IMG/VR virus record: IMGVR_UViG_3300033183_000491
Location: 175,551-239,550 of that record
Length of the DNA stretch: 64,000 nucleotides
Direction: 5' to 3' (one strand)
Part shown: one piece after another, positions 31,176 through 46,544 of the stretch
Position numbering within the stretch: the stretch's first letter is position 1
How the letters are laid out: the number at the start of each line of letters is the position of its first letter
The notes under the pieces: generated by a model
What the model saw: the letters and a program-made list of their open reading frames with translations, nothing else
What the model was told of the DNA's origin: nothing
Database searches by the model: none
Program-made: the position numbers and the translations under genes

Positions 31176-31247
31176 GTGTAATCTCTAAACAATCCTGTTA
31201 TAATAACTCGTACCTTCCATACATTTCTAAATACAAAAGGAGTTCTT

Positions 31248-31829
31248 ATGAACATTGACAATCCAACACTCATCCAACAGCTCTTCCAAGAATTCGTCTC
31301 CAATGGGGGAAAGCCTCAGATCACATCTTTCCGGACACACCTCGAAGGTCTTATGAAGAATGAGATTAAACCACTTTGTGGCTCATCACGACGCCTCGCT
31401 CCCGGAGCTCATGACTGGAGGGACGAACTTAATGCAAGGTTTGGAGGACGAGGGGCTAAGTGGCAATTTGTCTCTCTCGAGGAAATTGCTCCCACTCTTG
31501 ACGGGTTCGACGAGGAAGGCATCGATACGACTGAATACCGGATGTGGACCCAGTCGCAAGGAAAAGCTTGGATTCGTTACCTTAAGCCTCGCATCGTCAA
31601 TGGTCAGAATGTGGCGGCATTTACGGTCCATACACTGGGGTCAACGATCTTCCAGCCTCACCAACTCCACTTTATCCCGGTCGATCGTTTGGATGAGACC
31701 ATCACTCCTCTCGGGGGAACACCATTCTCCCACAAACTCGAGGAATCCATCACAATCTCTGATGAGGACCCTGTCGTCGAGGATACACTGGAGGATACCG
31801 AGGTTGACGATGATGACCTCATCGGGTAA
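31248..31829 (+). CDS. Early paralog family member 1 (GRGAKW / GKAWIR family)
   Basis: AAGGAG SD; near full-length similarity to 34587..35219. Confidence 0.8.
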   Translation: MNIDNPTLIQQLFQEFVSNGGKPQITSFRTHLEGLMKNEIKPLCGSSRRLAPGAHDWRDELNARFGGRGAKWQFVSLEEIAPTLDGFDEEGIDTTEYRMWTQSQGKAWIRYLKPRIVNGQNVAAFTVHTLGSTIFQPHQLHFIPVDRLDETITPLGGTPFSHKLEESITISDEDPVVEDTLEDTEVDDDDLIG

Positions 31830-31992
31830 GGGGTAGGAGGGGATTGGGAGGATTATCTCTCGATCGTACAAATCACTCAGACGGCGATATAATCGTTCGA
31901 TGAGTGTAACATTAAATGATCTAGTCTATAATATAGATGTAGGTCAATCGTTGAAACATTCACTCTCTCATTCAGTCTGAAAGGACAAACTC

Positions 31993-32493
31993 ATGGAAAC
32001 GATCTTCGACAAATACACAGAGATTCGCAATTACGCTGACTTCGCTCATTCGATCTACAAGATGAAAGGATTCTGCCCTGAATACCGTGAGGCTCGAAAG
32101 CCCGTCAAAGAGATCGTTGACTCTCTCGATCCTGCCCTCATTGAGAGGTTCAGGAAGGCTCAACGATGGGTCGATCAAAACCACCCACTCGTTGGCTGCA
32201 ACTCGACCTGGTCAAATTGCAAGTCGAAGGAGGACATCATGCTTGATTACCTCGGACTCAGCGAATTCCGTGTCGATCGTCTGAGAAAAGACGAAGAGTT
32301 CAAGAAGTCCGATGTTTCGTCGAAACAGATGATCGTTGATGGCTTTAGGTATTACGAGGCTCTCCTCGACAAAGAGAGGGACATCCTTTCAGCTGGTGAC
32401 GTTGACATCTCGCACACTGACCGGATGGAGGAGGCGATCAGGACAATGCTTCTTTCGTTGAGTGACTACGACGACAACCTTGACGCTCTTTGA
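31993..32493 (+). CDS. Hypothetical protein
   Basis: Promoter 31904, AAGGA SD. Confidence 0.7.
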   Translation: METIFDKYTEIRNYADFAHSIYKMKGFCPEYREARKPVKEIVDSLDPALIERFRKAQRWVDQNHPLVGCNSTWSNCKSKEDIMLDYLGLSEFRVDRLRKDEEFKKSDVSSKQMIVDGFRYYEALLDKERDILSAGDVDISHTDRMEEAIRTMLLSLSDYDDNLDAL

Positions 32494-32728
32494 GAAAAGG
32501 ATTCTGAATGTTTCTTCTAGTCGTTACAATCTTCACATTCGTTTGCTACACTTATCTTCGCATGCTTTGGCTTATGACTAAGCTTCTCCCGATCACTCTC
32601 AAGACGATGTACTTCATCTGAGCTTGACTCGATCATCACACCTCTCGATTCGTCAACTTTTCAAAAGTGTAAATTGACTTAGTCATTGATATAATCAACA
32701 AAAACATTTAAACAAACGAGGAAAACAC

Positions 32729-33028
32729 TTGAATCACACAGTTTTAACACTCATCACATCTTTCTGTCTTTCATCTCTTGCATACCACGCATCACAGGAT
32801 CAAGTTGAGATCTTGGAGTTTGACCCAATCGTTATTACTGCTCAGCACTCGACGATTGTCTTTGAAGAGACAGAGATTCGATCTGATGGTGACGCTGAAG
32901 GGATTGATTGGGATCACAATGAAGAGTTCTGGTGCGCAACGCATCCTGATGAATGTCTCATCGATACAAATCTTCAGGGAGGCGACGATGATGACGACGA
33001 TGACTCTGACGAAGAGTTTGGTTGCTAA
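32729..33028 (+). CDS. Secreted/membrane-anchored acidic protein
   Basis: TTG start, hydrophobic leader, poly-Asp tail. Confidence 0.6.
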   Translation: MNHTVLTLITSFCLSSLAYHASQDQVEILEFDPIVITAQHSTIVFEETEIRSDGDAEGIDWDHNEEFWCATHPDECLIDTNLQGGDDDDDDDSDEEFGC

Positions 33029-33113
33029 GACTTAAATTGGTTTGTGTACTTTATTTCGGACACTGATATAATAAAACGTACGGTTAATCTTCACACACTC
33101 AAAGGACATTCAA

Positions 33114-33488
33114 ATGAGAAACAACAAAAAGATCTGGACAAGAGAAGAGATCAATCAGATGATTATGCTTAATGATCACGCCGTTGAGAGAGCAATCGTT
33201 CGACTATATAAGGCACAGACTCAAGATGAAACTCTTCAGTCCAGATCAAAGCATCGCAATGGTCGAGGTTTCAACGCAGCTCACGCAAAATCTGGGACTC
33301 TCATCGCTCAGTGGATCTTGGGTCTTGATGGCAAGAATCGTCAAAGATACGAGCCTAAGAGTCTTCTACACCCAAGATGTTCAAAGCTTCTTGGTCCACG
33401 CATCAACTGTTTCAATGTGATCGCTAAAGCTAGGAAGATCGCGCTCATCCATTCATCACAACTCGTTGAGATTGCTAACAATCGTTAA
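33114..33488 (+). CDS. Hypothetical phage protein
   Basis: ND.AVERAIVRLY..QT.DE...NGRGFN; promoter 33044. Confidence 0.7.
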   Translation: MRNNKKIWTREEINQMIMLNDHAVERAIVRLYKAQTQDETLQSRSKHRNGRGFNAAHAKSGTLIAQWILGLDGKNRQRYEPKSLLHPRCSKLLGPRINCFNVIAKARKIALIHSSQLVEIANNR

Positions 33489-33501
33489 GAAAGAGGTTAT
33501 C

Positions 33502-33597
33502 ATGCTAACACTCACAGATTATGCGGCTTATGGGGGAATCATTTTAGCTTGCATCCTTGCTCTTGCCTTTATCTACGTTTTCATCGTTGAGATGTAG
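33502..33597 (+). CDS. 31-aa TM peptide
   Basis: GAGG SD; MLTLTDYAAYGGIILACILALAFIYVFIVEM. Confidence 0.55.
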   Translation: MLTLTDYAAYGGIILACILALAFIYVFIVEM

Positions 33598-33697
33598 TAA
33601 TCATAGAATTCATCGGTTTGATAGTGTATATTGAATCGTTGAATAGTATAATAACTCATCAATCATATTAATCTAATCAAACAAAGGAATCATTCAG

Positions 33698-33913
33698 ATG
33701 GATGTTAACACAAAGCCTAGAAAGCAAAGACGACGTCTAACAGATAAACCAGCTCACACAGTTTGGTCTGAAAAGCTTGACAAAGGAGGATACATTATCT
33801 TTGCAGGGATTCGAGGAACAGACGCTAAGACTATCGCTGGAGGAGCAACAAGTGAGGAAACTCTTGAGTACAACATGAGGAAAGCAAAGCTCAAGTTTGG
33901 TCTCAAACTCTAG
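33698..33913 (+). CDS. Basic hypothetical protein
   Basis: Promoter 33624, AAGGA SD. Confidence 0.65.
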   Translation: MDVNTKPRKQRRRLTDKPAHTVWSEKLDKGGYIIFAGIRGTDAKTIAGGATSEETLEYNMRKAKLKFGLKL

Positions 33914-34032
33914 GATGCTCGAGGTTTATACCTCATGCTTCGTCAATTTTCCAAAGTGTATATTTAGATATCCTATATTATAATAAACCACAAGGTCCAT
34001 TAAACTTAACTTCTTCATCTAAAGGACACAAT

Positions 34033-34254
34033 ATGAATAATATTACTAAAGACCAATACCTCAGTCTTCTTCAAGGAGACTTTCCTTCATCACTCGACGA
34101 GGACCTCAAGATGGACATTCCTCAAGATGGTGCAATTCTTCTCGTCGAGGAAGATGGTCAATACTACTTTGATGGAATTGAACTTAATGAACTAAGCGAT
34201 GAGGAGATTGAGGAATCTAAAGGATACGGCAAGATTGTCTACATTAAGATCTAA
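34033..34254 (+). CDS. Acidic hypothetical protein
   Basis: Promoter 33956, AAGGA SD. Confidence 0.65.
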   Translation: MNNITKDQYLSLLQGDFPSSLDEDLKMDIPQDGAILLVEEDGQYYFDGIELNELSDEEIEESKGYGKIVYIKI

Positions 34255-34338
34255 TAAATAAAGTGTATATGTGGTTTAGGAGGTTTATAATAAACCATAA
34301 GGTCCATTTAATAAACTTCTTCATCTAAGGGATATTAT

Positions 34339-34404
34339 TTTGAACAAAGTAAAAGCTCGCAAATCTATCCATTTGAACAAAGTAAAAGCTCGCAAATCTA
34401 TCCA
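34339..34404 (+). repeat. Perfect 33-bp tandem duplication
   Basis: TTTGAACAAAGTAAAAGCTCGCAAATCTATCCA x2. Confidence 0.95.
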
Positions 34405-34516
34405 AAAGCTACTTGACAAAGCTAAGAAAGCTCAGGCTTCTGGTAATCATAAAGAATCACTTCAACTTTTAGAAGATGCACATCAACTAAGCTTATGGAT
34501 TAAAGATAGAGGATAA
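34340..34516 (+). CDS. 58-aa basic protein with duplicated N-terminus
   Basis: TTG start after promoter 34263; MNKVKARKSIHLNKVKARKSIQ... Confidence 0.55.
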   Translation: MNKVKARKSIHLNKVKARKSIQKLLDKAKKAQASGNHKESLQLLEDAHQLSLWIKDRG

Positions 34517-34586
34517 TCAATAAAGTGTAACTTTCAAACTTTATTGGTATAATAACTCATCACCCCTTAAATAAAAGGACAACGCA

Positions 34587-35219
34587 ATGACTAACTCAAA
34601 CATTCAATCAGACAATCAAAACGAGGAGATCAACATGTCAACAATTCAAACACTTTTTCAAGAATATCTATCTGATGGCGGCAAACCACAGGTCACATCC
34701 TTTAGGGTTCACATCGAGGCTCTCATCAAGAAAGAGATTAAACCACTTTGTGGAAGATCCGGAAAGTCTGTTGGTGATAATGATTGGAGGACTCAACTCA
34801 TTGAACGCTTCAAGGGACGAGGAGCAAAATGGCAATTTGTCTCTCTCGAAGAGATTGCTCCCACTCTTGATCGGTTTGACACAGAAGGGGTTGATACAGA
34901 AGATTACAGACAATGGACTCAATCTCAAGGAAAAGCTTGGATTAGGTTTATGGCTCCCCGATTAAATAATGGAGTTAAGTCTGCTGCTTTTACAGTTCAC
35001 ACTCTTGGTTCAACAATCTATCAGCCACACCAGGTCCATTACATTGAGCTTGATAGATTGGATGAAGTTATTACACCACTTGATTCAACACCACATGCAT
35101 TAAAACTCGAGGAATCTATTCAACCAGATGAAGATCAGATGACAGACATTCAGACTGAGCTTGGACAAGAGGTTTATCCGGCTGAAATGGATTGTCTAGA
35201 TGATGATCTAGGTCTATAA
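34587..35219 (+). CDS. Early paralog family member 2
   Basis: FKGRGAKWQFVSLEEIAPTLD...QGKAWIRF; promoter 34525. Confidence 0.8.
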   Translation: MTNSNIQSDNQNEEINMSTIQTLFQEYLSDGGKPQVTSFRVHIEALIKKEIKPLCGRSGKSVGDNDWRTQLIERFKGRGAKWQFVSLEEIAPTLDRFDTEGVDTEDYRQWTQSQGKAWIRFMAPRLNNGVKSAAFTVHTLGSTIYQPHQVHYIELDRLDEVITPLDSTPHALKLEESIQPDEDQMTDIQTELGQEVYPAEMDCLDDDLGL

Positions 35220-35402
35220 AGGACTTGGGGATAATCTTCTAATCTCTTTAACTCTTCACCCTCAAAGATGACTTGATGTTGCCACCCTTGGCAGCGTCAA
35301 CTCGATAAGTGTATATTTTCTCAACATTGAGTATAATATATTATAAGGCATTTACCTTTAACATTCAATCAAAACATTCAGTCAATCGATAAGGAGAATA
35401 AT

Positions 35403-35693
35403 ATGTCAAGTAAAAACATGATCGAGGTACAATGGGAGTTTGACATCGTCACAGACGAAGAGCTTCAGCGACGACTTGGATTAACAGAAGGAGAGGTTTA
35501 CGAGATCATCGATGAAGATGATGGTGCGGAGAGGTTGAACATGATGTGTGCCCAAGAGATGGAAGTTCCGGTTTACATTAACCTTGATCTTTTCTTTGAT
35601 GATCCAAGATCAGTTGACGAAGACGAGATTACAGAAACTCTTTCAGATGAATATGGTTGGTTGGTCGATAGCTGGGAGTGGTCAAACGATTAA
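35403..35693 (+). CDS. Highly acidic hypothetical protein
   Basis: AAGGAG SD; promoter 35309; LSDEYGWLV tail. Confidence 0.7.
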   Translation: MSSKNMIEVQWEFDIVTDEELQRRLGLTEGEVYEIIDEDDGAERLNMMCAQEMEVPVYINLDLFFDDPRSVDEDEITETLSDEYGWLVDSWEWSND

Positions 35694-35800
35694 TCATTCT
35701 TATATTATCAAATGTGTATATAAGATTATGTCTGTTTATAATAAACCATAAGGTCCATTTAATCTATCCAATAACCTTTAAAAGAGAAAACAGAGATCAA

Positions 35801-36031
35801 ATGAGTGATTCTAAATATCTTAATATCTATAATGAGTGGAAGACCAGAGCAATTAAGGAAGGATTCACATTCAATCAGTTTTGGGAACATTATAATCTTT
35901 ACATTGACCCGATGAATGCACAGCCTGAAGAATGTGCAATTGCTGCCAAACTTTCTTATAGATCACTTATTGAGACAAGAAATGCAGAAACACAATTAAA
36001 CAGACAGTTGGAGACAGCACAATGGATCTAA
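35801..36031 (+). CDS. Hypothetical protein
   Basis: Start revised to ATG downstream of promoter 35714. Confidence 0.6.
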   Translation: MSDSKYLNIYNEWKTRAIKEGFTFNQFWEHYNLYIDPMNAQPEECAIAAKLSYRSLIETRNAETQLNRQLETAQWI

Positions 36032-36252
36032 TCAAATATCTTAAAGAGTTTTTATATGGAGTTGCTGCAGTTTCTGTTGTCTTTGCTTCAGCAGTCATTG
36101 CTTTAACAATCTTTATGTTCCCATTCATATTCTGTGCACTTGTTGAATACGAGACAGGAATGACTTGGCTTGGAATAACTTTTATCTTGCCGTCATATGC
36201 ATGCATGTATGTTATCGCACGACACTTTAATCTAATCGAATTCGAAGACTAA
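36022..36252 (+). CDS. Two-TM membrane protein
   Basis: Two hydrophobic segments. Confidence 0.6.
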   Translation: MDLIKYLKEFLYGVAAVSVVFASAVIALTIFMFPFIFCALVEYETGMTWLGITFILPSYACMYVIARHFNLIEFED

Positions 36253-36275
36253 TCAAATCACAAACGAGGTTCTAA

Positions 36276-36572
36276 ATGAATGATCAAGACATCACCTTTA
36301 AAACAAACTCTGATGGATCAATCCTTGCTTGGCCAGCTCCAACAGGTCCGGCAACAGAAGTTAATCGGCCTCTTGAAGAAAGATTACAATATTATTCAGC
36401 AACTCACACACTCAAAGTCGATCACAGTTTATTTGTCCCGAAGAAAGAAACTGTCGAACTAATCTTAGAAGCTTGGGATGAAGCTCAATGTAATCTCGTT
36501 GTCGATGAAGATTCTTATTATGAATATCCTATCGATCCTTCTTGGACTTACTCCGACATTTATTCATATTAA
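36276..36572 (+). CDS. Hypothetical protein
   Basis: GAGG SD. Confidence 0.6.
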   Translation: MNDQDITFKTNSDGSILAWPAPTGPATEVNRPLEERLQYYSATHTLKVDHSLFVPKKETVELILEAWDEAQCNLVVDEDSYYEYPIDPSWTYSDIYSY

Positions 36573-36594
36573 TAAATAACACGAGGTATATAAC

Positions 36595-36771
36595 ATGTTA
36601 TCACCGCTTGAATTTGAATTTTGGCAAGCAGCTATTCCTCCTATTTGTATGTTGACAATCCCGATCATGATTACGTCTGGAGCTTCTGTTTGGAGAGCTT
36701 TTCTTACTTCATCAGTTGTTTATCTTATTATTGTTCTAGTTGTTGCTTGCGACATCCAATCTTTTAACTAA
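36595..36771 (+). CDS. 58-aa membrane protein
   Basis: GAGG SD; hydrophobic; below track cutoff. Confidence 0.55.
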   Translation: MLSPLEFEFWQAAIPPICMLTIPIMITSGASVWRAFLTSSVVYLIIVLVVACDIQSFN

Positions 36772-37005
36772 CTTTTAGTTGTTTTGCCCCTCACACGTCT
36801 CGTCTCATCATCAGGGCTTCTGGAAACGATTTGAACTACTTTCCGCGAGATCTTTTTCTAGTTTTTTTCTTCTACTTTTTTTGTGATTCATTTCTTATTA
36901 AGATTGAGAATCACAGATAATCTATAATGTGTATATTTCCTCAATGTTGAGTATAATATATCATAAGGCATTTGAATTTACAACTTAATCTTTAAAAGGA
37001 TAATA

Positions 37006-37170
37006 ATGAAAGCTTCAACTATTTACAATATTTCTTCAACAATTTGTTTTATTCTTTCTCTTTACTTCTTTTATCAGGTCTCGCCTTTATATGCTCTCAT
37101 CATGTCAATCATTCTCCTCGCCTCAGAAGTTATGGTTTGTTATAAAACTCAAAATGTGTATTTAGATTAA
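37006..37170 (+). CDS. 54-aa two-TM protein
   Basis: Promoter 36929, AAGGA SD. Confidence 0.55.
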   Translation: MKASTIYNISSTICFILSLYFFYQVSPLYALIMSIILLASEVMVCYKTQNVYLD

Positions 37171-37248
37171 CTCTGTTTTATAATATTATATCAATCCATT
37201 AAAACCTATTAACCAACACCAAAACATTAAACAGAAAGAAAACTGCTT

Positions 37249-37617
37249 ATGTCTATCAATATCAATAATAATCCTCAAAGATATTTCTCCATTGATTACA
37301 GATCTTGTCCTTCAGGTGTTGGAACAATCATTGATCCAGATGGTCAAACTCTTGTTACTTCTCCAGATTCAGGCCCAGAAACAATTGAGGAAGCTTACAA
37401 TATCTTTGGTGATTATTACAACTTTGTCATCCACATCAACAAAAGCTTCGGTGAAGATCCCCAATCAGCTCATAAAGATCTCCAAAAGGTTTTAACTAAG
37501 TCTAATATTTCTCATGTTCACGATTTAGAACTCGCTTATGAATATCCTGATAAACACACTAACGGATTCTTTGAAACTAATACTTGGTCTTCTATCATCA
37601 ACAATATGATTAACTGA
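37249..37617 (+). CDS. Hypothetical protein
   Basis: Promoter 37156. Confidence 0.65.
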   Translation: MSININNNPQRYFSIDYRSCPSGVGTIIDPDGQTLVTSPDSGPETIEEAYNIFGDYYNFVIHINKSFGEDPQSAHKDLQKVLTKSNISHVHDLELAYEYPDKHTNGFFETNTWSSIINNMIN

Positions 37618-37632
37618 AAGGGGTATTACACC

Positions 37633-37725
37633 ATGCACATTTCAGAACTATCTAATAGTGAACTCATTACAGCTTGCGCTATTTCTATGTTTTTTCTCTG
37701 GTATCTCATCAGAGCTCTTGAATAA
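37633..37725 (+). CDS. 30-aa TM peptide ending WYLIRALE
   Basis: Paralog of 41688..41774. Confidence 0.65.
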   Translation: MHISELSNSELITACAISMFFLWYLIRALE

Positions 37726-37919
37726 ATCTTACTTGACCTACACACCCCATCGCATCATCATGAGTTCTAGATCTGACGATTTTAACTACTTTTCCGTAGA
37801 TCTCGAGTCAAAAAAAGTTTTATATATTTTTTAGTGTAAATATGAAATATTAGAGTTATAATAAACCATAATCCAATATATCAATCAAACAATCTCTCAA
37901 TCTAAATAAAGGATTCAAA

Positions 37920-38249
37920 ATGGATAACAATAAACAAACAGCTGCAGAAATCTTGTTCGATACAATCAAATCTTTTTCTCATCTCAATCAAATCACTCAA
38001 TTCGCCCTTGGTCAAGGATGGGATCCAGATTTTGTTGAAGACGAAGATTCAGAAACATACTCTACAAATATGGAACTAGAAGTTCTTATGTCTGAAATTG
38101 ATGGGGCTCGTCACATCGCAAATCTATCTCGAAGACCTTCTCGACAACTCAAAATCTTACTGATCGATAAATATAATGTGGTTGCTGATACCATTCACAA
38201 CACAATCTATTCAGACGATTCTTGTCCTTCTCACACCATCAAATACTAA
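37920..38249 (+). CDS. Hypothetical protein
   Basis: Promoter 37834, AAGGA SD. Confidence 0.65.
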   Translation: MDNNKQTAAEILFDTIKSFSHLNQITQFALGQGWDPDFVEDEDSETYSTNMELEVLMSEIDGARHIANLSRRPSRQLKILLIDKYNVVADTIHNTIYSDDSCPSHTIKY

Positions 38250-38358
38250 TCACAATGACTCGATTAACATACCTATCGGGTCATCAACTCGGATGTGTAA
38301 ATAAGATATCTCTTGATTATAATATAACATAATCACCTTCAATCACAAAGGATTCACA

Positions 38359-38724
38359 TTGAACAATCAAATCACTCTAAGTCAATGGAATACATTAATC
38401 AACACAATCAAAGAATCTCCCTCAACAAAAGCTGAACATCCAGAAGTTCTCTACATCCAAGAAGAATCTTTCGGCCAAAACACTCGTCATTCAGTCTACG
38501 ATAACTTTGATCGCCACTATATTCCAGGTCTTGATCTCGTTATATCTCCAAACTCAAACATAGGAACACTCACTGTTTATAACGGCTCAGAACAAGCTAG
38601 AGCTCCTATCTCTTTCGATGATGCTCTCCAGATTGCTCAAAACTTCTTCAACGAATATGGAGGACATATGGCTGAACAGATTGTTTGCGACTGGGTCATG
38701 GATGGTAACGACTCGGTCTTTTAA
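38359..38724 (+). CDS. Hypothetical protein
   Basis: Promoter 38295, AAGGA SD, TTG start. Confidence 0.65.
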   Translation: MNNQITLSQWNTLINTIKESPSTKAEHPEVLYIQEESFGQNTRHSVYDNFDRHYIPGLDLVISPNSNIGTLTVYNGSEQARAPISFDDALQIAQNFFNEYGGHMAEQIVCDWVMDGNDSVF

Positions 38725-38817
38725 CAAAGTTTCTCTACGAATCATTATAAAACTTTTTATCTACTCTTCCGTAGATCTTATTCTAAAAAATATTCTCCCA
38801 AAAAGGACTCTCGCAAA

Positions 38818-39147
38818 ATGAGCATTCTAAATAACGAAGTTACAACTCTACGACAAATCAAAAACGGTACTAGAGCTTTCCACTGCCTTCGCACTAACTC
38901 AATCTACACGTCTCATTCAAACGGATATGTTCGAAGAGAAGTTAATGCTTATACAAAGCAAAGAAAACAATATCAGCTCAATCCTAAGAAAAGCATCAAA
39001 AGATTCTACACAGTAAACGAAACCACTCAAAGTTATAACACTACAACACGAATCATGGTTATGAATGAATCAGATCGATTGGCTATTATCGAAAGACTCG
39101 CTGAAAAATATGAAGGCTATCGTGGCAATTCAAGTTATAGAGGTTAA
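38818..39147 (+). CDS. Hypothetical protein, paralog of 51367..51762
   Basis: QIKNGT..F....IYTSHSNGYVRR. Confidence 0.65.
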   Translation: MSILNNEVTTLRQIKNGTRAFHCLRTNSIYTSHSNGYVRREVNAYTKQRKQYQLNPKKSIKRFYTVNETTQSYNTTTRIMVMNESDRLAIIERLAEKYEGYRGNSSYRG

Positions 39148-39434
39148 ACTCTTACTTGGTATGCATACCCTTTGGATCATATAGATTTTCATTACAAAGC
39201 TTTTTGACTGCTCGCCCGTAGATCTCGAGTCAATAAAAAAATATCTTAAATCTAAGACGAGACAGAGGCAAAATCGCGTCGCCTCTAGAGTAGTGTAAGA
39301 AAAGAATGACGAGAATGGCGTCAGTAATGTTTTTATTTGTAGTATGATAGTTTCCTTAGAAAACGTGAAAAGTTAAAAACTGGTGTATTTTAAGCCACTT
39401 GAGAAGTATATTTGAGAGAGGGAGAGAATAGAAG

Positions 39435-40061
39435 ATGTATATGAGGTGTGAAAACATGAATTTTACGCAGAAGATGTTTGACGAGTTAGATATATGTGAT
39501 TTGAATTATGCGAAGTTTATAGGTTGTGATTTTAAGGGATTGAAGATTGAGTTAGGAGATGTTTATTTATCTGCGATGACGTTTGAGAATTGTGATATGA
39601 GGGAGTGTGTATTGCAGATGAATGTGGCGAATTTATCGTTTAGTGGTTGTGATTTGAGTGGGAGTAGGTTTGAAGATTCTGGTGTGATGGTTATGTATTT
39701 TGAAGAAGCAAATTGTGAGGGAGTGGATTTTAGGGGGATAGATTATGATTTAGAAGAAGCTTTGGGAGAGTGTTTGAATGGATATAATCATGATCCGCGT
39801 GTGTTGTTTAATGGAGCGAATTTGAGGGGAGCGTTGTTTGATGGATTGAGATTGAATCATGGACAGTTTGAGGGAGCTGATTTGGAAGGGGCTAGTTTTA
39901 GGGGGTGTGATTTGAGTTCTGTTGAGCCTTTGGAGTATGAGCAAGAAAATACATATTTTGATTATTCTGCTGGCACAAGTTTTTTCTTTGCGAGTGTGAA
40001 GGGGGTGGATTTTGAGGGAGCAAATTTGGAGGGAGTGTTGGGATTGGAAGAAGAAATTTGA
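39435..40061 (+). CDS. Pentapeptide-repeat protein
   Basis: ANLRG/ALFDG/ADLEG/ASFRG/CDLSS repeats. Confidence 0.88.
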   Translation: MYMRCENMNFTQKMFDELDICDLNYAKFIGCDFKGLKIELGDVYLSAMTFENCDMRECVLQMNVANLSFSGCDLSGSRFEDSGVMVMYFEEANCEGVDFRGIDYDLEEALGECLNGYNHDPRVLFNGANLRGALFDGLRLNHGQFEGADLEGASFRGCDLSSVEPLEYEQENTYFDYSAGTSFFFASVKGVDFEGANLEGVLGLEEEI

Positions 40062-40148
40062 GTGTAAATAGGATTGGTTTGAGGGAATAATATATTATAA
40101 GGTTTATTTGATTATTTATTGATTTGTTTTGGATTGGGAGAGATCAGC

Positions 40149-40430
40149 ATGAAATATATTAAGAATCTAAGAAATATTGAAGTGGCTAAAACGTGGGGAA
40201 ACTTAAGTCCATCGCATATGTATGAAGAGTGTATCTCTTATGAGAATCATGAAGGAACATTTAAGGTATATTCAGATGGGACTGTTTATTCATATAGATT
40301 ATTGATTGGAGAAGTTAAAAACTCTGAATGGATAGTATATGATTATACAGCACCCGGAAAAAGGTTTTATTCTAATACAACTTCAAGACATGTCGGGTTA
40401 TTAAAAAAATGGGCATCAAGAATTGTTTAA
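40149..40430 (+). CDS. Hypothetical phage protein
   Basis: YSYRLLIG...YSNTTSRHV; start revised. Confidence 0.6.
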   Translation: MKYIKNLRNIEVAKTWGNLSPSHMYEECISYENHEGTFKVYSDGTVYSYRLLIGEVKNSEWIVYDYTAPGKRFYSNTTSRHVGLLKKWASRIV

Positions 40431-40501
40431 GTGTATATAATCTATAAATAAAGCATAATACTTCACAAGGTATATTTAAATAACTCGTCAAAAAGGAAAC
40501 A

Positions 40502-40714
40502 ATGAAAATGACCAAATATTTCTTGAGAGGATTAGATGATGACGTTGGAGCTCTTTCATTGGTGATGGGGACTCAAATGGCATGTGCTGGTTTGGTAATC
40601 CCGAGTGAGTTAGGGATGAATCCTAATTCTGTTTGGGTAGGGATATCATCATTAAGTTTGTTTGTATTGACTATTTATGTTATTGGCTTTATGGTAGAGA
40701 AGAAAAAGCTATGA
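40502..40714 (+). CDS. Membrane protein
   Basis: Hydrophobic segments; AAGGA SD. Confidence 0.55.
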   Translation: MKMTKYFLRGLDDDVGALSLVMGTQMACAGLVIPSELGMNPNSVWVGISSLSLFVLTIYVIGFMVEKKKL

Positions 40715-40959
40715 ATAAGGAAACGGTTATAATGAGAACAATGTTAGACAAGATTTTTAATATTGAAGTTGAAGGTGATATCTTAAAGAAGCTTCCAGCA
40801 TGTTTTAAGTATGATAATAAAAGATGGGATTATACTATTAAGTCTGAAGATAGAGATCATGCAAAATCTTTTGCTTTGAAACTTCAATCAACAAAAACTT
40901 TTGAAGTCATTTATCTTGAGAAGAGTGATTGTTGGCTAGTAAGATTTATTAGACATTAA
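40711..40959 (+). CDS. Hypothetical protein
   Basis: Coupled ATGA start. Confidence 0.55.
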   Translation: MNKETVIMRTMLDKIFNIEVEGDILKKLPACFKYDNKRWDYTIKSEDRDHAKSFALKLQSTKTFEVIYLEKSDCWLVRFIRH

Positions 40960-41029
40960 GATATAAATGTGTATTTAGAAAACTTTGGTATTATAATAAA
41001 CCATACCCCATATTAAAAAGGACTTTCCA

Positions 41030-41338
41030 ATGAAAAAATATTTTATCTCCCTCCTATTGTTAAGCCTCGCTTTCTCTGGATGTAATAATCATATTAATCT
41101 GGAAGAAAAAGAATCTGATTCACAAGATATTGATTATTATGCAATCTTTTGTAAGCATCCTCTTGGACACGTTATGAAACACATTGTGACTAAAAAGGAA
41201 TGGAAGATGTCATTTGGATGGAGATCAGGTGTTTACAATTTCAGAGATGTTCAAGGTGTTTATCATGAAAACAGAGGTCATTGTTACTCTAATGATAGAG
41301 ATATCTTTGATATAAATGGTAATCTTAAGTCTAAGTAA
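41030..41338 (+). CDS. Putative lipoprotein
   Basis: MKKYFISLLLLSLAFSGC lipobox; promoter 40969. Confidence 0.7.
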   Translation: MKKYFISLLLLSLAFSGCNNHINLEEKESDSQDIDYYAIFCKHPLGHVMKHIVTKKEWKMSFGWRSGVYNFRDVQGVYHENRGHCYSNDRDIFDINGNLKSK

Positions 41339-41362
41339 TAATAACATTTAAAGGAAATAATA

Positions 41363-41677
41363 ATGAACTCACTGTATAATATGGATAGTGATAATCTTTC
41401 AAATCTTATTAAGTCATCAACAAGTGGAAATAATCTTCTTGAGAATCTAAAGTCAACTCCACAATCTTTGGAGAGCAATTCAAATGTTTATAATCTAATT
41501 TGTAATATTGAAAAATATTTTGAAGAAACAAATTCTACAGTTTTGCAGATTCTAAGAAGTCATACAGGTGTAGATGAATTTGAAACATTTAGAGATATTA
41601 AAACTATTGAAGAAGTAAATGATCTTTTAGATCAAGGGTGCGAAGTTTATATGTTACCAAAGAACGATATTCTATGA
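41363..41677 (+). CDS. Hypothetical protein
   Basis: AAGGA SD. Confidence 0.6.
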   Translation: MNSLYNMDSDNLSNLIKSSTSGNNLLENLKSTPQSLESNSNVYNLICNIEKYFEETNSTVLQILRSHTGVDEFETFRDIKTIEEVNDLLDQGCEVYMLPKNDIL

Positions 41678-41687
41678 GGAGTTTATA

Positions 41688-41774
41688 ATGTCAAATGTCC
41701 CAACAAGCGATCTTATTTTCGGAAGTCTTCTTTGTATGTTTATGTTATGGTATCTTATTAGAGCTCTAGAGTAG
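41688..41774 (+). CDS. 28-aa TM peptide ending WYLIRALE
   Basis: GAGGAG SD; paralog of 37633..37725. Confidence 0.65.
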   Translation: MSNVPTSDLIFGSLLCMFMLWYLIRALE

Positions 41775-42055
41775 ATTTATGTCAAACATGTTTTTCTGTA
41801 TCTTAACTCTATGCCAGATAAGTTTTATATATGTTTTAATATCTTTTCCTGACATAGCGTTTAAAGCTTTTCTAATCTTATTGTGTACTTTCGCAATAAT
41901 AGTTGGAAGAGATTTATATCTATTTATTAATAATATTTTTAAATAGTAAAGATTGAAATGTTGTGGAATGAATATGTGTAAATAAAACATTCTTTGGATA
42001 TAATATTTCATAAGGTCCAATATTCATTTCGACTTTCCTTTTAAAGGATCAAACT

Positions 42056-42370
42056 ATGTACAAAACAACTTTAAAGCTAACATATGATTTCGGGATTCAT
42101 CTTAAGGATTTTTATGTCCCTGTTAAAGATGTTATGTTAGATGAGATTATTGATCTAGAAAATAAACTTAATGTTGATACATCTAATATTTCTGATGAGG
42201 CATTAAGTGAAATGCTTGTAGATTTTCTAAATCTTCCTAGGACATTTGATATCAGCATTGAAGATGAACATCTTCTTGAAGACTATCATTATATTTATGA
42301 CTTGTATTTAGGTAATGTTTGTAATGGGTTTGCTCCAAAATATGAAGATATGAACAAGGACATGTTATAA
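42056..42370 (+). CDS. Acidic hypothetical protein
   Basis: Promoter 41976, AAGGA SD. Confidence 0.65.
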   Translation: MYKTTLKLTYDFGIHLKDFYVPVKDVMLDEIIDLENKLNVDTSNISDEALSEMLVDFLNLPRTFDISIEDEHLLEDYHYIYDLYLGNVCNGFAPKYEDMNKDML

Positions 42371-42371
42371 A

Positions 42372-42758
42372 ATGAATAAAGAAACGAATATTATTATTAA
42401 GTTTGACACTAGTCCAAGTCCATGGAGTACTAATTACCAAGAGATAGAATTTTCTCGTGACAAAATAGAAACCATTGCTGATGAACTAATAAATGAATGT
42501 TCAGGTAAAGACTATACAGCATCTTATGCATATGGAAAACATGTATCTAAAGTTATTGAAATTCATTGGGATAATACATGTGGATCTGTTATACCTCTTT
42601 ATAAAGCACTAATTCAGGTTTTGAAAGAAAAGAGAGAACCTAAAGAGAATTGGTATGGAGGAGCAACATCAGCTATTAGATGTTTACAGACAAGAATAGC
42701 TTATGCTACACCCGGATTCGTGGAAGCAAAAAGATACAGAGAATTATATGGTGATTAA
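42372..42758 (+). CDS. Hypothetical protein
   Basis: Tightly packed ORF. Confidence 0.6.
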   Translation: MNKETNIIIKFDTSPSPWSTNYQEIEFSRDKIETIADELINECSGKDYTASYAYGKHVSKVIEIHWDNTCGSVIPLYKALIQVLKEKREPKENWYGGATSAIRCLQTRIAYATPGFVEAKRYRELYGD

Positions 42759-42759
42759 A

Positions 42760-43014
42760 ATGTATACGTTAAGTAAAGAACATTTAAACTTTATTGTAAG
42801 AGTTTCTATACTGTTATCTAATTCAAATAAGTTTAATAAGAACTGGAACTTTTCTGTTAGAAGATACTTAGATGGTTTCCAGTTTAATTGGACTTGTGGT
42901 AGACACAGTTTAATGTGGAGATCATCTGGATGGGATGAGGATCATTTAGAATATTATTCTGGAAGTGATACAACAGATATTATCTTGATAAGCGAGCTTG
43001 ATCATGTCAAATAA
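42760..43014 (+). CDS. Hypothetical protein
   Basis: Start revised to ATG after upstream stop. Confidence 0.55.
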   Translation: MYTLSKEHLNFIVRVSILLSNSNKFNKNWNFSVRRYLDGFQFNWTCGRHSLMWRSSGWDEDHLEYYSGSDTTDIILISELDHVK

Positions 43015-43201
43015 TTTAGTAATCTTATTTGTTAGTTTTTGGGGGTCATTGTTTTTTCTTTCTCTTGGTGTTATGAATAGCTTGATTGATGTTTCGAGAA
43101 CAGATATAATTGATGATTTTCTGATAGTTTTATTATGTATCTTTACTAGCTATGAATTAGCTAAAAGACTAGCTTTAAGATTAACGAAAGATGAATCATA
43201 A
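43004..43201 (+). CDS. Two-TM membrane protein
   Basis: Hydrophobic; coupled. Confidence 0.55.
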   Translation: MSNNLVILFVSFWGSLFFLSLGVMNSLIDVSRTDIIDDFLIVLLCIFTSYELAKRLALRLTKDES

Positions 43202-43297
43202 GTGTAATATTATTATTCTAATATTATAATAAATCATAAGGAATGATTAATAAAACATCCTTTAAAACAAGCAAAAATCTTTATCGGAGAACATATA

Positions 43298-43462
43298 ATG
43301 GAAACTATCATTATACCCCCAGAGTTTGTAATCTTATTTTTTATCCCAATTGCTGGTTTTTTCTATATTGCTAGTAAAACTTTAAAGTTCTGGCCTCCAT
43401 TTACTTTCTACATTGTAACACAAATCTTGTTAGCTACTTTTGCAAGGTATATGTTTGGCTAA
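43298..43462 (+). CDS. 54-aa membrane protein
   Basis: GGAGA SD; promoter 43202; coupled to next ORF (TAATG). Confidence 0.55.
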   Translation: METIIIPPEFVILFFIPIAGFFYIASKTLKFWPPFTFYIVTQILLATFARYMFG

Positions 43463-43644
43463 TGATTAAAGTTGGAGATCTTGTATTAAAAGACAATAAA
43501 GATATTTGGCTTATAATCTATGCATTTAACAAAGGAAATGAGTATATGTTTAAATATCTTAAGGATAACAAGGTAAATATTATTCATATAAGATCATCAA
43601 AAAACTTAAGTGAATATAAAGATATGAGAATTATTAATGTTTGA
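43462..43644 (+). CDS. Small SH3/KOW-like protein
   Basis: MIKVGDLV start. Confidence 0.5.
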   Translation: MIKVGDLVLKDNKDIWLIIYAFNKGNEYMFKYLKDNKVNIIHIRSSKNLSEYKDMRIINV

Positions 43645-44041
43645 CGATTTTGAAATAAGAGAACTAGGGTTCTCAGATGATGGAGAAGATATTATGACAA
43701 GAGAAAAATCTACTAAATTAATTTCACTTGTTCAAGAAGGTGTTCTTGACGCTGAGTCTGTATTACAGAATATGATTGATTGGTTATCTGAAAGAGATGT
43801 TGCTAATTTTTTCGAAGATGAATATAGCGAGTTTGACGAAGAAGATGAAGAAAGTGATTACTTTAGTTATACAGACTCGTCTATAGATGGTGTTTATATC
43901 GAACCTCCTCGTAATTATTGTCTTGAATGTGGAGATGATTACGAAGTATTTTCTCATACATGCGAAAATAACGAGAATGATTTACAAACTTTAGGTTGTA
44001 AAATCCATGATGATAAATGTGAATTCTGCGACAAAGATTGA
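43637..44041 (+). CDS. Very acidic protein with C-terminal Cys motifs
   Basis: EDEYSEFDEEDEESD; CLEC, HTC, CEFC. Confidence 0.65.
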   Translation: MFDDFEIRELGFSDDGEDIMTREKSTKLISLVQEGVLDAESVLQNMIDWLSERDVANFFEDEYSEFDEEDEESDYFSYTDSSIDGVYIEPPRNYCLECGDDYEVFSHTCENNENDLQTLGCKIHDDKCEFCDKD

Positions 44042-44123
44042 TAATGTGTAAATAAAACATTCTTTGGATATAATAAATCACAAGGTCCATCAAACAAACA
44101 CTCATTTCATTATAAGGACAAAA

Positions 44124-45296
44124 ATGAATATTTCAGATTATACAAAAGAGTTTTCTAATCTAACAAATCTGGTTTCAGAGATTACTTCAGTTATCAAGAC
44201 TCGCGAAGACAAAAGCAATTTATGGGCTTCTTTTAAAAGAGAAAACGAAGACAAAATTAAGAATCTCCTTGGGATTACTAATAATGATATTGATAACCCA
44301 TGTAATCTTATTAACTTTGATATTGATGACGACAAACAACTACTTCTTCTAAACTATACATCTCAAGCTCATAATGTTTTACATGCTTATGATGATGGTT
44401 GGTCTAACGAACTTAAGCTTTGTAGAGGATTGGTTTTTTCTTTTTCCGATGGCGTTTCATTAGTGAGCCGAGGATTCGAAAAGTTCTTTAATGCAAACGA
44501 GTTAAAAGAAAACACATATGAAAGTTTATTATCCAATCATGATAATAAAAAGACATATATTGCTTACGAAAAGGTTGATGGTCATATGATTGAATATTTT
44601 GAATATGATAATCAACTTTGTGCAACAACAAGAGGAAAGTTTAATACTAGTTCTTCGTTAGAGTCACTAAGTTTAATGTCATACAAAGAATGGAATTTAG
44701 CAAAAGGATATTATAAACTTTGTGGACATGACCTTATGTCTATTGTAACAGAGCTAGTAACACCTTCAACAGAAGTCCTGGTTAACTATGAAGGACAAGA
44801 GAGTATATATCTTCTATCAGCTTATGATAAATCAGGAAATAAAATAGATCAAACTTTACTTAAAAACTTAGTGTTCGTAATTAAAAATGCAAAGATACCT
44901 AAATCTAAAAGATTCACACTGTCAGGTATGTTCATAGAAGTTGCAAGAAGAGATATTGATAATAATGAAGGATGGGTTCTTAATTTAAATGGAACTCTAT
45001 TGAAATTCAAATACAATAACTATATTGGTCTTATGGTAAGTAAAAAGATATGTTATAAATACCTTATGCAACGAATATTAACTAATACAACTGAAAAGAT
45101 GTTCTCTACGCTTGATGATGACAACATGAAGATTGTTGATGTGTTAAAGAAAAATATCAACATTAAAGTTATTGAATGTAAAAAAGAAGAATCTTATAAA
45201 CCATTATATAGTCTTTGGTCAGATGAAGAAGGAAGTTTAAACTATTTCAGACTTGTATGTAGAAAATTTTACAAAGAGTTTATTTTATCTATTTGA
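44124..45296 (+). CDS. RNA ligase, T4 Rnl1-like
   Basis: CRGLVF, SRGFEKFFN, motif I EKVDG, ATTRG, EGWVL...KFK; start revised to ATG after AAGGA and promoter 44046. Confidence 0.85.
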   Translation: MNISDYTKEFSNLTNLVSEITSVIKTREDKSNLWASFKRENEDKIKNLLGITNNDIDNPCNLINFDIDDDKQLLLLNYTSQAHNVLHAYDDGWSNELKLCRGLVFSFSDGVSLVSRGFEKFFNANELKENTYESLLSNHDNKKTYIAYEKVDGHMIEYFEYDNQLCATTRGKFNTSSSLESLSLMSYKEWNLAKGYYKLCGHDLMSIVTELVTPSTEVLVNYEGQESIYLLSAYDKSGNKIDQTLLKNLVFVIKNAKIPKSKRFTLSGMFIEVARRDIDNNEGWVLNLNGTLLKFKYNNYIGLMVSKKICYKYLMQRILTNTTEKMFSTLDDDNMKIVDVLKKNINIKVIECKKEESYKPLYSLWSDEEGSLNYFRLVCRKFYKEFILSI

Positions 45297-45314
45297 TTAA
45301 AGGAAAACAATATA

Positions 45315-45470
45315 ATGTTAGTATCTAAAATTACTGCAGGTGATGTTTCTCGGATTACTAAATTAGACCCAGAAGACATTGGGAGATATGGAGTATGGCA
45401 TAAAGGTTTAATCATTTACGTTTCTAATAGTAAAGACAAATGTAATAAATTGATTAAAGAAATATCATAA
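45315..45470 (+). CDS. 51-aa hypothetical protein
   Basis: AAGGA SD. Confidence 0.5.
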   Translation: MLVSKITAGDVSRITKLDPEDIGRYGVWHKGLIIYVSNSKDKCNKLIKEIS

Positions 45471-45557
45471 AGATTAAAATGTGTATTTAATCAAAATTTG
45501 GTTTATAATAAATCATAAGGTCCCATAAATAAATCTTCATTCATAAGGATTCAAACA

Positions 45558-45728
45558 ATGGAAAATTTCCTAGCACCAAGTTTTTTCATCCCCACGTTTT
45601 TAAGCATTCTTATTTTAATGTTAGTTGTAACTATAATGTTTAACGGGAGAGTTACTTTATTAAAATCTTTTATTTATGCAGCATGTATTTATATGCTTTT
45701 CATCATTAATAGTATTCCACGACTTTAA
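45558..45728 (+). CDS. 56-aa two-TM protein
   Basis: Promoter 45481, AAGGA SD. Confidence 0.55.
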   Translation: MENFLAPSFFIPTFLSILILMLVVTIMFNGRVTLLKSFIYAACIYMLFIINSIPRL

Positions 45729-45746
45729 TATACAAGGGGTATTCAA

Positions 45747-46445
45747 ATGAACAAAGGATTCCAGTACGAGAATAAAATCTTAAATCTTATGAAATCTATT
45801 AATTTGGTTCCTGAAGAATTTGTTAATAGACAGCCTGCAGGTTCAGATAGTACACAACCTGACTTGATTTTAAATCTAAAAGGTAAAAATGTTAATGTTG
45901 AAATTAAAGAAAATATTCGAGCTCAAGCTGGTGGAACATCTATCAGGTATATAGATGGTAGTTTTTCTCTTGTCAAATCAAATGAAGATGTATGTGAAGA
46001 TGAAATATATAATGTCTTATACGAAAAGAAAAATCATATAGACAATCTTATTGAATTTCATAAATCATCAAGTATTCCTTTTGCAACTACAAAAGACTTA
46101 TGGATAAAGTCTGTGGAGAAAAACTTGTTGAAGAATATTAATACAAAGATTGAATCTAAATCTGAAGTTATTGAAAATCATTATGTTAATAAAGATACAT
46201 ACTATATCCACATTGGAGGAAAAGGTCTTTATTACATGAAAGATGATATTCTAAATCTAGGTGTTCCAAGGCTTAAATCTAAAGTTCGATTAGAAATAAG
46301 AGCTACAAGGAACGGGTCTAGATTGAACAAACAAGGTGTTAGGATATGTAATGCTACTCTTCGAATGCAATCAAGAATTCTAGAATTAGAAAAAAGTCCT
46401 TATTCTTTAGAAAACATTTCGTCTATTACAAGTTTAGCATCTTGA
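45747..46445 (+). CDS. PD-(D/E)XK restriction-endonuclease-like protein
   Basis: GFQYE(N)KI...QPDLIL...NVEIK. Confidence 0.72.
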   Translation: MNKGFQYENKILNLMKSINLVPEEFVNRQPAGSDSTQPDLILNLKGKNVNVEIKENIRAQAGGTSIRYIDGSFSLVKSNEDVCEDEIYNVLYEKKNHIDNLIEFHKSSSIPFATTKDLWIKSVEKNLLKNINTKIESKSEVIENHYVNKDTYYIHIGGKGLYYMKDDILNLGVPRLKSKVRLEIRATRNGSRLNKQGVRICNATLRMQSRILELEKSPYSLENISSITSLAS

Positions 46446-46544
46446 TCAAAAAGGTTAAGATTGATATTGTGTAAATAAAATATTTTTTACATATAATAAA
46501 CCACAAGGTTCAACAAATAAACATTCATTCAAAAAGGTTTTAAA

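What the first reader, a model, noticed from the sequence alone, without database searches (positions are those of the whole stretch)
33979..44075. Promoter-plus-leader units are copied as blocks, suggesting cassette-style gene shuffling
Seen: 41974-42005 and 44044-44075 are identical over 32 bp; 33979-34024 and 34286-34331 share -10, leader (GTCCATT..AACTTCTTCATCTAA) and SD; 35309-35352 and 36929-36972 are near-identical; 33647 and 34548 share TATAATAACTCATC. Each pair precedes unrelated ORFs. Inference: recombination between these repeats inserts, deletes or swaps downstream genes, an integrase-free cassette array.
Basis: partly seen in the sequence, partly recalled or inferred. Interest (0 to 1): 0.6.

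Follow-up and report, generated by a model that had tools for sequence, protein, structure and literature searches.

The report
Early-promoter array in marine jumbo phage
The repeats are a family of about 40 near-identical promoter-plus-leader units that switch on small early genes in an uncultured 240-kb marine phage; this layout is already known from T4-type phages, and close relatives show almost no gene shuffling at the repeats.

Summary
All four repeat pairs exist as described. They are not isolated copies. They belong to one motif family, aaGTGTAwaT-N15-TATAAT-AaayCAyAAGG, followed by a G-poor leader and an AAAGGA-type ribosome-binding site. The 239,550-bp phage genome holds 35 exact copies against 0.9 expected, all pointing in the direction of local transcription. 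About 30 of them lie in window 30.7-50 kb, roughly one per 570 bp.

The motif also occurs in relatives whose RNA ligase is only 45-61% identical. Among close relatives the units vary about as little as second codon positions. Most of the similarity is therefore functional constraint. A few pairs (41999/44069/46492, 35332/36952, 33979/34286/35737) also share spacer or leader sequence and are real copies.

The recombination idea is the published PeSL model for T4-type phages. Here, 17 contigs at 94-99% identity from several studies are collinear over 29.9-51.9 kb. None of the three gene-scale differences has both ends in repeat cores, though one abuts a unit. In relatives at about 60% identity the small genes are heavily permuted, and similar promoter-leader blocks precede unrelated genes. 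Shuffling is real over long times. The role of the repeats in it is unproven.

The parts
30705..61051 (+). Array of 33 promoter-like units. Their -10 hexamers start at 30728, 30873, 31034, 31199, 31927, 32690, 33067, 33647, 33979, 34286, 34548, 35332, 35737, 36952, 37179, 37857, 38318, 40086, 40454, 40992, 41999, 43225, 44069, 45504, 46492, 47958, 49765, 50349, 52274, 55108, 57538, 58694 and 61046. Each unit is GTGTAw, a 17-nt gap, TATAAT, usually CAyAAGG about 5 nt later, then a 17-67 nt leader, SD and start codon.
   Evidence: list and strand; information content; 35 observed vs 0.94 expected; leaders: G 2.9% vs 16.7% in the arm
41974..42019 (+). Promoter unit before ORF 42056-42370. Its -35, whole spacer and -10 are identical to the unit at 44044-44075.
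44034..44106 (+). Promoter unit before the T4 RnlA-type RNA ligase gene (44124-45296). It is a copy of 41974-42019 (93%) and of 46457-46529 (73 nt, 86%).
46457..46529 (+). Promoter unit before the paralog gene 46545-47267. It resembles the RNA-ligase unit, not the units of its own paralogs.
33978..34026 (+). Promoter unit of the AAGGTCCATT leader class, before ORF 34033-34254.
34283..34332 (+). Promoter unit of the same class before ORF 34340-34516. It is 30 nt identical to 35734-35763.
35309..35353 (+). Promoter unit of the AAGGCATTT leader class. Its spacer holds the palindrome CTCAA-CA-TTGAG. It lies before ORF 35403-35693.
36929..36973 (+). Copy of the 35309 unit, with spacer palindrome CTCAA-TG-TTGAG, before ORF 37006-37170. 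Its leader is 25/26 identical to a unit in the distant relative L026, which precedes a different ORF.
33624..33664 (+). Promoter unit of the TATAATAACTCrT class, also found at 34525-34565 and 31176-31212.
   Evidence: (D6, D13)
31248..31829 (+). Paralog gene 1 of 4 (function unknown). The others are 34587-35219 (67% aa), 46545-47267 (46%) and 58718-59275 (27%). Each has its own promoter. Paralogs 1 and 2 share the promoter class; 3 does not.
35270..35303 (+). Strong hairpin without a U-tract just upstream of promoter 35332 (z = -4.6). Similar hairpins lie at 38255-38284 (z = -3.4) and 36880-36917. Only about 5-7 of 33 units have such a stem-loop.
34339..34371 (+). 33-nt in-frame tandem duplication at the start of ORF 34340-34516. 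It is present in the window and absent from every relative that covers it.
40137..40148 (+). Indel site. Relatives L011/L059 and L056 carry an extra 941 nt here (ORF120, an internal promoter unit, ORF148). The site lies between the leader/SD of promoter 40086 and the ATG of ORF 40149.
29914..29964 (-). 51 nt with a minus-strand promoter-like site. In relatives L019/L020 it is replaced by 701 nt carrying a minus-strand 178-aa ORF.
51845..51948 (+). tRNA-Met and its 3' flank. Relative L059 diverges into unrelated DNA after 51948.

Best explanation
The repeats are standardised early-gene expression units of an uncultured marine/estuarine phage. The phage genome is 239.5 kb, has 141-bp terminal repeats, 29% GC and a gp23-type capsid protein.

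Each unit has four parts:
- a promoter: GTGTAw at the -35 position, a 17-nt gap and a perfect TATAAT;
- a conserved start-site context, CAyAAGG;
- a short G-depleted leader, presumably unstructured;
- an AAAGGA-type ribosome-binding site.

About 30 units drive one to four small ORFs each in the 34-kb plus-strand arm at the right end of the genome. This arm is probably the host-takeover region.

The units look alike mainly because they must bind the same polymerase holoenzyme and give the same kind of mRNA 5' end. Three sub-families were also produced by local copying of promoter, spacer and leader. Over long times the arm is hyperplastic, with genes gained, lost and permuted one by one. Within present populations it is stable.

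Shown: the motif family, its enrichment and strand rule, purifying selection on the units, true copies, collinearity in close relatives, and permutation in distant ones.

Inferred: promoter activity, early timing, which sigma factor reads the motif, and whether recombination uses the units.
For: - Motif family, enrichment and strand.
- Genome layout, all genes on the minus strand to 205 kb and then on the plus strand.
- The same motif, plus-strand only, in 6 loci at 59-61% RNA-ligase identity, and at lower density in loci at 45-47% identity.
- Variable sites among close relatives: promoter cores 1.5%, leaders 1.9%, other intergenic 4.3%, codon positions 1/2/3 at 2.4/1.6/6.8%.
- G-depleted leaders.
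- Extra identity in only a few pairs.
- Collinearity of the close relatives' contigs.
- Permuted gene order in distant relatives.
- gp23-type capsid protein.
- Marine and estuary samples from 10 studies.
Against: - There is no RNA or transcription-start evidence.
- The -35 element GTGTAw is not the TTGACA of ordinary sigma-70 promoters, and TTGACA-type sites are not enriched in the arm.
- The phage encodes its own sigma-70-family protein that stops after region 4.1, so the reader of the motif is unknown.
- Blocks 75-83% identical over about 80 nt occur in different phages before unrelated genes. Exchange could explain this as well as constraint does.
- One population-level indel abuts a unit and may be flanked by a decayed second copy (p about 0.03).
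Confidence: 0.7

Rival explanations
1. PeSL-type mechanism. The phage's own homologous recombination crosses over between the 30-70-nt promoter-leader repeats. This deletes or excises the ORFs between them as small circles and re-inserts them elsewhere, so the repeats act as linkers of a cassette array. It could operate alongside the functional explanation.
For: - True copies exist with identical spacers.
- Paralog 46545 carries the RNA-ligase-type unit rather than its paralogs' type.
- The locus between homologs of 36595 and 37249 keeps its flanking promoters while the ORFs between differ, and each of those ORFs has a promoter.
- Window block 43225-44041 runs from one promoter to the next and is absent between the 43004 homolog and the RNA ligase gene in L026 and L027.
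- The L011 insertion abuts a unit, contains one, and may end in a decayed copy.
- Crossovers between the -10 and the ATG were shown for RB49 and phi1 (PMC2839356).
Against: - 17 fetched contigs of close relatives, plus contigs laid from four sequencing runs, are collinear over about 22 kb holding 28 units.
- None of the three gene-scale differences has both ends in repeat cores.
- Copies do not co-vary between relatives.
- Genes also move without promoters. For example, the 40149 homolog directly follows the RNA ligase gene in L030.
- The repeats are short.
- Breakpoints in intergenic DNA are expected from selection alone.
Confidence: 0.3
2. The units are not host-sigma early promoters. They are read by the phage-encoded sigma-70-family protein, as middle-class promoters or with a virion-delivered factor. 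This would explain the unusual GTGTAw -35 element.
For: - The phage sigma has regions 1.2, 2 and 3, which would fit a TATAAT -10, but it stops after region 4.1.
- TTGACA-type promoters are not enriched in the arm.
- The motif is conserved across relatives with different GC content.
Against: - The sigma gene itself sits 40 nt behind a GTGTA-N18-TATAAT site. Something else must therefore read the motif first.
- The small ORF following the sigma gene has no Pfam region-4 match.
- Arrays of small ORFs near a genome end are typical of host-polymerase early regions (my own knowledge).
Confidence: 0.3
3. The matches are chance similarity in AT-rich, low-complexity DNA.
For: The genome is 29% GC and the leaders use almost only A, C and T.
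Against: - 35 copies against 0.94 expected, none in the reversed sequence, and strict strand coordination.
- Conservation in relatives.
Confidence: 0.01

Closest known systems
PeSL (promoter-early stem-loop) cassettes in hyperplastic regions of T4-type phages: RB49/phi1, T4/PST, KVP40/nt-1 (PMC2839356, PMC4122927)
   Same: - Repeated sigma-70-like promoter, SD and ATG units in the intergenic spaces of a region dense in small ORFans.
- The same block in front of unrelated ORFs.
- Gene content of the region varies between relatives.
- No dedicated recombinase nearby.
   Different: - The defining stem-loop terminator just upstream is present in only about 5-7 of 33 units, because most units start 0-30 nt after the previous stop codon.
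- The -35 element is GTGTAw, not TTGACA, TTTACW or TTGYVH.
- There is an extra conserved CAyAAGG start context and a G-free leader.
- The phage is only distantly T4-like: the capsid protein is 34-40% identical to those of RM378 and metagenomic huge phages.
- In close relatives the indels are not bounded by the units.
- Mini-circles are untested.
T4 early promoters and early transcription units
   Same: Many strong promoters with a near-perfect TATAAT and a non-canonical -35 element, each serving one or a few small non-essential genes (my own knowledge, plus PMC4122927 for the consensus TTTACW-N17-TAYWAT).
   Different: The -35 sequence and register differ. There is no evidence here on ADP-ribosylation or on AsiA/MotA-type control. 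The phage carries its own sigma-70-family gene.
Integron gene-cassette arrays
   Same: A string of short, mostly single-gene units separated by a repeated element.
   Different: No integrase and no attC-type imperfect palindromes. Here the repeat is a promoter in front of each gene, whereas integron cassettes are mostly promoterless (my own knowledge). No integrase family appears among the called genes.

Membership tests
PeSL cassettes of T4-type phages | Repeated sigma-70-like early promoter (-35, about 17-nt gap, -10) in intergenic DNA | tested here: met
   35 exact GTGTA-N18-TATAAT sites against 0.94 expected, all co-oriented with the genes. This is sequence-level evidence only. The -35 differs from the published PeSL consensi, and promoter activity was not tested.
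PeSL cassettes of T4-type phages | Stable stem-loop (terminator) immediately upstream of the promoter | tested here: not met
   The mean z of the 60 nt upstream is -0.65. Only 35332, 38318 and 36952 (z below -3) and two or three weaker cases have a hairpin, and none has a U-tract. In most units the previous stop codon lies 0-30 nt before the -35.
PeSL cassettes of T4-type phages | Shine-Dalgarno sequence and start codon at the 3' end of the unit | tested here: met
   Leaders of 17-67 nt end in AAAGGA or AAGGAG 5-10 nt before an ATG or TTG.
PeSL cassettes of T4-type phages | Clustered in a hyperplastic region of small ORFans whose content differs between relatives | tested here: met
   About one unit per 570 bp in 30.7-50 kb. 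Nearly all ORFs lack Pfam or PHROG matches. Gene order is permuted in L009, L026, L027 and L030.
PeSL cassettes of T4-type phages | Indels between closely related genomes bounded by the elements | tested here: inconclusive
   Only three gene-scale differences were found among relatives at 94-99% identity. None has both ends in unit cores. The one at 40143/40149 abuts a unit and may be flanked by a decayed copy, p about 0.03.
PeSL cassettes of T4-type phages | Formation of mini-circles by crossover between flanking elements | not testable with these tools
   Only assembled contigs of the sequencing runs were available. They showed no circle or deletion junction between units, but contigs drop rare forms.
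T4-type (gp23 capsid) phages | gp23-family major capsid protein | tested here: met
   PF07068 at E = 3.6e-66 at genome 116505-117497 on the minus strand. The nearest records are RM378 and metagenomic huge phages at 34-40% identity, so this is a distant member.
Integron cassette array | Tyrosine-recombinase integrase next to the array | tested here: not met
   No integrase family appears among the precomputed Pfam labels of the called genes from window 23 kb to the genome end.

The most novel reading that the evidence does not exclude
Promoter plus 5'UTR modules without stem-loops serve as portable recombination linkers across a whole clade of uncultured marine gp23-type jumbo phages. Blocks 75-83% identical over about 80 nt sit before unrelated genes in different genomes. 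On this reading, single early genes are exchanged between phages as ready-to-express cassettes. The conserved CAyAAGG start context and GTGTAw -35 element would be read by a phage-adapted holoenzyme using the truncated phage sigma.
Probability: 0.2. Interest if true: 0.5.

Novelty: new member of a known kind. Interest (0 to 1): 0.3.

Why it matters
The finding extends the T4-type layout of a promoter-dense hyperplastic early region to a distant, uncultured, widespread marine phage lineage. It also gives that lineage a usable promoter consensus for annotation: GTGTAw-N17-TATAAT-N4-CAyAAGG.

It provides a population-level test of the PeSL shuffling idea. In this phage the array is stable at 94-99% identity, although gene order is scrambled at about 60% protein identity. 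Shuffling, if repeat-mediated, is therefore rare per generation. This is an ordinary but well-characterised case, not a new kind of element.

Tried and rejected
- A blastn search of 33-40.9 kb against GenBank phages found no match.
- An exact search for the motif plus leader in IMG/VR found none apart from the excluded own record.
- Paralog 34587 as a query in viral contigs found nothing.
- An apparent 229-to-100-nt replacement in L011, inside ORF 41030, is a run of N in the scaffold and not an indel.
- L013 runs into unmatched DNA after window 42604, inside an ORF. It is a single short contig and possibly chimeric, so I did not count it.
- The joints and loose ends in the laid contigs at 34316-to-34929, 33975, 34005, 34286 and 37834 are cross-matches of other promoter copies or of the paralog locus. 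They are not rearrangements.
- Concerted evolution: substitutions in one copy are not mirrored in its twin in relatives.
- The three tandem promoters at 30728, 30873 and 31034 are each followed by about 120 nt without an ORF. As possible small RNAs, their folds are no better than shuffles, and Rfam finds only tRNAs.
- I looked for a source of the GC-rich part of the arm (30-40 kb) in the higher-GC clade. No homologs of those genes occur in the loci held.
- The ORF after the phage sigma gene looked by eye like region 4.2, but it has no Pfam support.
- No multisubunit polymerase beta-type domain was found in the genome. The single-subunit polymerase search had no working control and is uninformative.
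Full report
**Where the window lies.** The window is the last 64 kb of a 239,550-bp IMG/VR virus record with direct terminal repeats. The repeat is 141 bp, and GC is 29%. Genes run on the minus strand up to about 205 kb and on the plus strand from 205.5 kb to the end, which is window 30-64 kb. The phage has a gp23-type major capsid protein. Its nearest database relatives are Rhodothermus phage RM378 and metagenomic huge phages at 34-40% identity. The window also holds PhoH, a helicase and a T4 RnlA-type RNA ligase and seven tRNA genes. The stretch 33400-39399 is held by 20 seawater, marine or estuary metagenome runs from 10 studies.

**The observation.** The pairs are not private repeats. Anchoring on GTGTA-N18-TATAAT gives 35 exact sites in the genome. 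Local shuffles give 0.94, and the reversed sequence gives none. Allowing N18-21 gives 42 sites: all on the minus strand at 6.6-77 kb and all on the plus strand at 206-237 kb, so always co-oriented with the genes. Besides the two anchored boxes, information content is high at T8 of the -35 block, at A just after the -10, and at C-A-t-A-A-G-G five to eleven nt after the -10. In the plus arm I count 33 units, about one per 570 bp between 30.7 and 50 kb.

Each unit is followed after 17-67 nt by an AAAGGA or AAGGAG site and a start codon. The leader between CAyAAGG and the SD is 2.9% G, against 16.7% in the arm as a whole. The restricted alphabet explains part of the likeness between leaders.

**How much is copying.** I shuffled each alignment column among the 31 units. 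This null keeps the consensus and destroys pair-specific likeness. Only 44069/46492, 41999/44069, 45504/46492 and 35332/36952 exceed the 95th percentile of its maximum. With a gap allowed, 33979/34286 also share a 15-nt leader word, and 34286/35737 share 30 identical nt.

Identity across the whole promoter spacer is not needed for polymerase binding, so these few are real copies. In 35332/36952 the shared spacer is a 5-2-5 palindrome, CTCAA-yr-TTGAG. This could also be an operator, which would be a functional reason for the likeness (inference).

The four paralogs 31248, 34587, 46545 and 58718 each have a promoter. The first two share the TATAATAACTCrT class, so gene and promoter were duplicated together. 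The third carries the RNA-ligase-type unit, so promoter and gene have been re-assorted at least once.

**Functional constraint.** Among 13 of the close-relative contigs, the share of variable sites is:
- 1.5% in promoter cores;
- 1.9% in leaders;
- 4.3% in other intergenic DNA;
- 2.4%, 1.6% and 6.8% at codon positions 1, 2 and 3.

The units are therefore as constrained as second codon positions, and the small ORFs behave as real genes. The same motif, on the plus strand only, is found in loci whose RNA ligase is 59-61% identical (L009, L026-L030). It occurs at lower density in a 45-47% clade with 39-44% GC.

**Test of the shuffling idea in close relatives.** Assembled contigs from four runs of four studies lie collinear on 33400-39399 at about 97-98% identity. 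The only indel is a 33-nt tandem duplication at 34339-34371, which the window has and the others lack. Nine further contigs cover 29965-38569. Eight more cover parts of 36.6-51.9 kb: L011/L059, L012-L014, L056 and L060-L063. For L056 and L060-L063 I compared only the called gene order with the window's and ran no nucleotide alignment.

Gene-scale differences are three.
- **(a) An extra 941 nt in L011/L059 and L056**, carrying ORF120, an internal promoter unit and ORF148. It sits between the leader/SD of promoter 40086 and the ATG of ORF 40149. The 57-nt spacer at its right end aligns weakly to the promoter-leader unit on its left (score 17, shuffle p about 0.03). A flanking, decayed second copy is therefore possible but not secure. 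ORF148 has homologs elsewhere in L009 and L026.
- **(b) A 701-nt segment in L019/L020**, carrying a minus-strand 178-aa ORF. It replaces window 29914-29964 in the divergent control region. The left break lies just after an SD-like AAAGAAAGAGA.
- **(c) A divergence in L059** into unrelated DNA 30 nt after tRNA-Met, at 51948.

None of the three is a crossover between two repeat cores. An apparent fourth difference is a scaffold gap. Twin units do not share substitutions in relatives.

**Distant relatives.** With the RNA ligase gene as anchor, the homologs of window genes appear in quite different orders in L009, L026, L027 and L030. Unrelated ORFs are interspersed among them. Two loci look like cassette events bounded by promoters.
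- Between the homologs of 36595 and 37249, the flanking promoter units are conserved. The leader of 36952 is 25/26 identical to L026:583, although the neighbouring proteins are only 32-51% identical. The window has one ORF there. L026 has two other ORFs, each with its own promoter.
- The window block 43225-44041 runs from one promoter to the next. It is missing between the 43004 homolog and the RNA ligase gene in L026 and L027.

Genes also move without promoters, for example the 40149 homolog in L030. An approximately 80-nt block spanning the -35, spacer, -10, ATAyyATAAGGCA, a CA-rich leader and the SD is 75-83% identical between units of different phages that precede unrelated ORFs.

**Comparison with the known.** This is the arrangement described as PeSLs in T4-type phages. 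Those are repeated early-promoter cassettes in hyperplastic regions, proposed and partly shown (mini-circles; crossovers between the -10 and the ATG) to mediate modular shuffling (PMC2839356, PMC4122927). The defining upstream stem-loop is mostly absent here, and the -35 element is different. I therefore file this as a relative of that kind and not as a PeSL in the strict sense.

**Who reads the promoter is open.** TTGACA-type sites are not enriched. The phage encodes a sigma-70-family protein with regions 1.2, 2 and 3 that ends after region 4.1. Its gene lies behind the same motif, which favours initial reading by the host enzyme.

**Verdict.** This is a new member of a known kind, of modest interest.

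Noticed in passing
genome 25962-26711 (-), outside the window; locus L051:1075-1824 (-): The phage encodes a sigma-70-family protein of 249 aa with regions 1.2, 2 and 3. It aligns to SigA/RpoD only up to region 4.1 and then stops, so it lacks the -35-reading region 4.2. The next ORF (84 aa, overlapping by 11 nt) has no Pfam region-4 match. The gene is preceded by the same GTGTA-N18-TATAAT motif.
   Followed up: partly
window 29960-30700: About 550 nt of C/A-rich, almost G-free non-coding DNA with a 53-nt direct repeat (30025 and 30224, 81%). A GC-rich block follows at 30540-30700. The stretch lies at the point where transcription diverges. It could be an origin or control region.
   Followed up: no
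window 30728-31175: Three tandem promoter units (30728, 30873, 31034) are each followed by about 120-140 nt without a convincing ORF. As possible small RNAs, their predicted folds are not better than shuffles, and Rfam has no match.
   Followed up: partly
window 36836-36870, 37780-37816, 38755-38791, 39202-39238; also L026:470-510: A conserved non-coding element, CTAC-TTTyCC-GTAG-ATCT, sits inside a longer interrupted hairpin flanked by T- and A-runs. It is repeated four times in the window and is present at the orthologous place in a relative at about 60% identity. It may be a terminator or a processing site.
   Followed up: no
window 32625-32658, 33915-33948, 35269-35302, 38256-38289: A family of hairpins framed by TGACTyGAT ... 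GTCAACT, without U-tracts, lies at the 3' ends of genes just upstream of some promoters.
   Followed up: partly
window 30000-40000: This part of the arm has 37-43% GC against 25-30% in the rest of the window, and its promoters read GTGTATAT rather than GTGTAAAT. It may be a mosaic segment from a different lineage. No source was found among the loci held.
   Followed up: partly
window 34339-34371: A 33-nt in-frame tandem duplication at the very start of ORF 34340-34516 is unique to this genome among all relatives that cover the site.
   Followed up: yes
window 41030-41338: The 102-aa ORF starts with a lipoprotein-like signal (a hydrophobic stretch, then SGC). Relative L013 has a locally much more divergent patch over exactly this N-terminal part.
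   Followed up: no
window 39435-40061: A pentapeptide-repeat protein gene (Pfam PF00805 and PF13599) lies in the early arm. The gene and its neighbours are strongly G-rich on the coding strand.
   Followed up: no
window 52304-53599, 55150-55518, 55573-56532: By precomputed Pfam labels, the arm also carries an S-adenosylhomocysteine-hydrolase-like gene, a dCMP-deaminase-like gene (weak) and a Gad2-like gene (weak).
   Followed up: no
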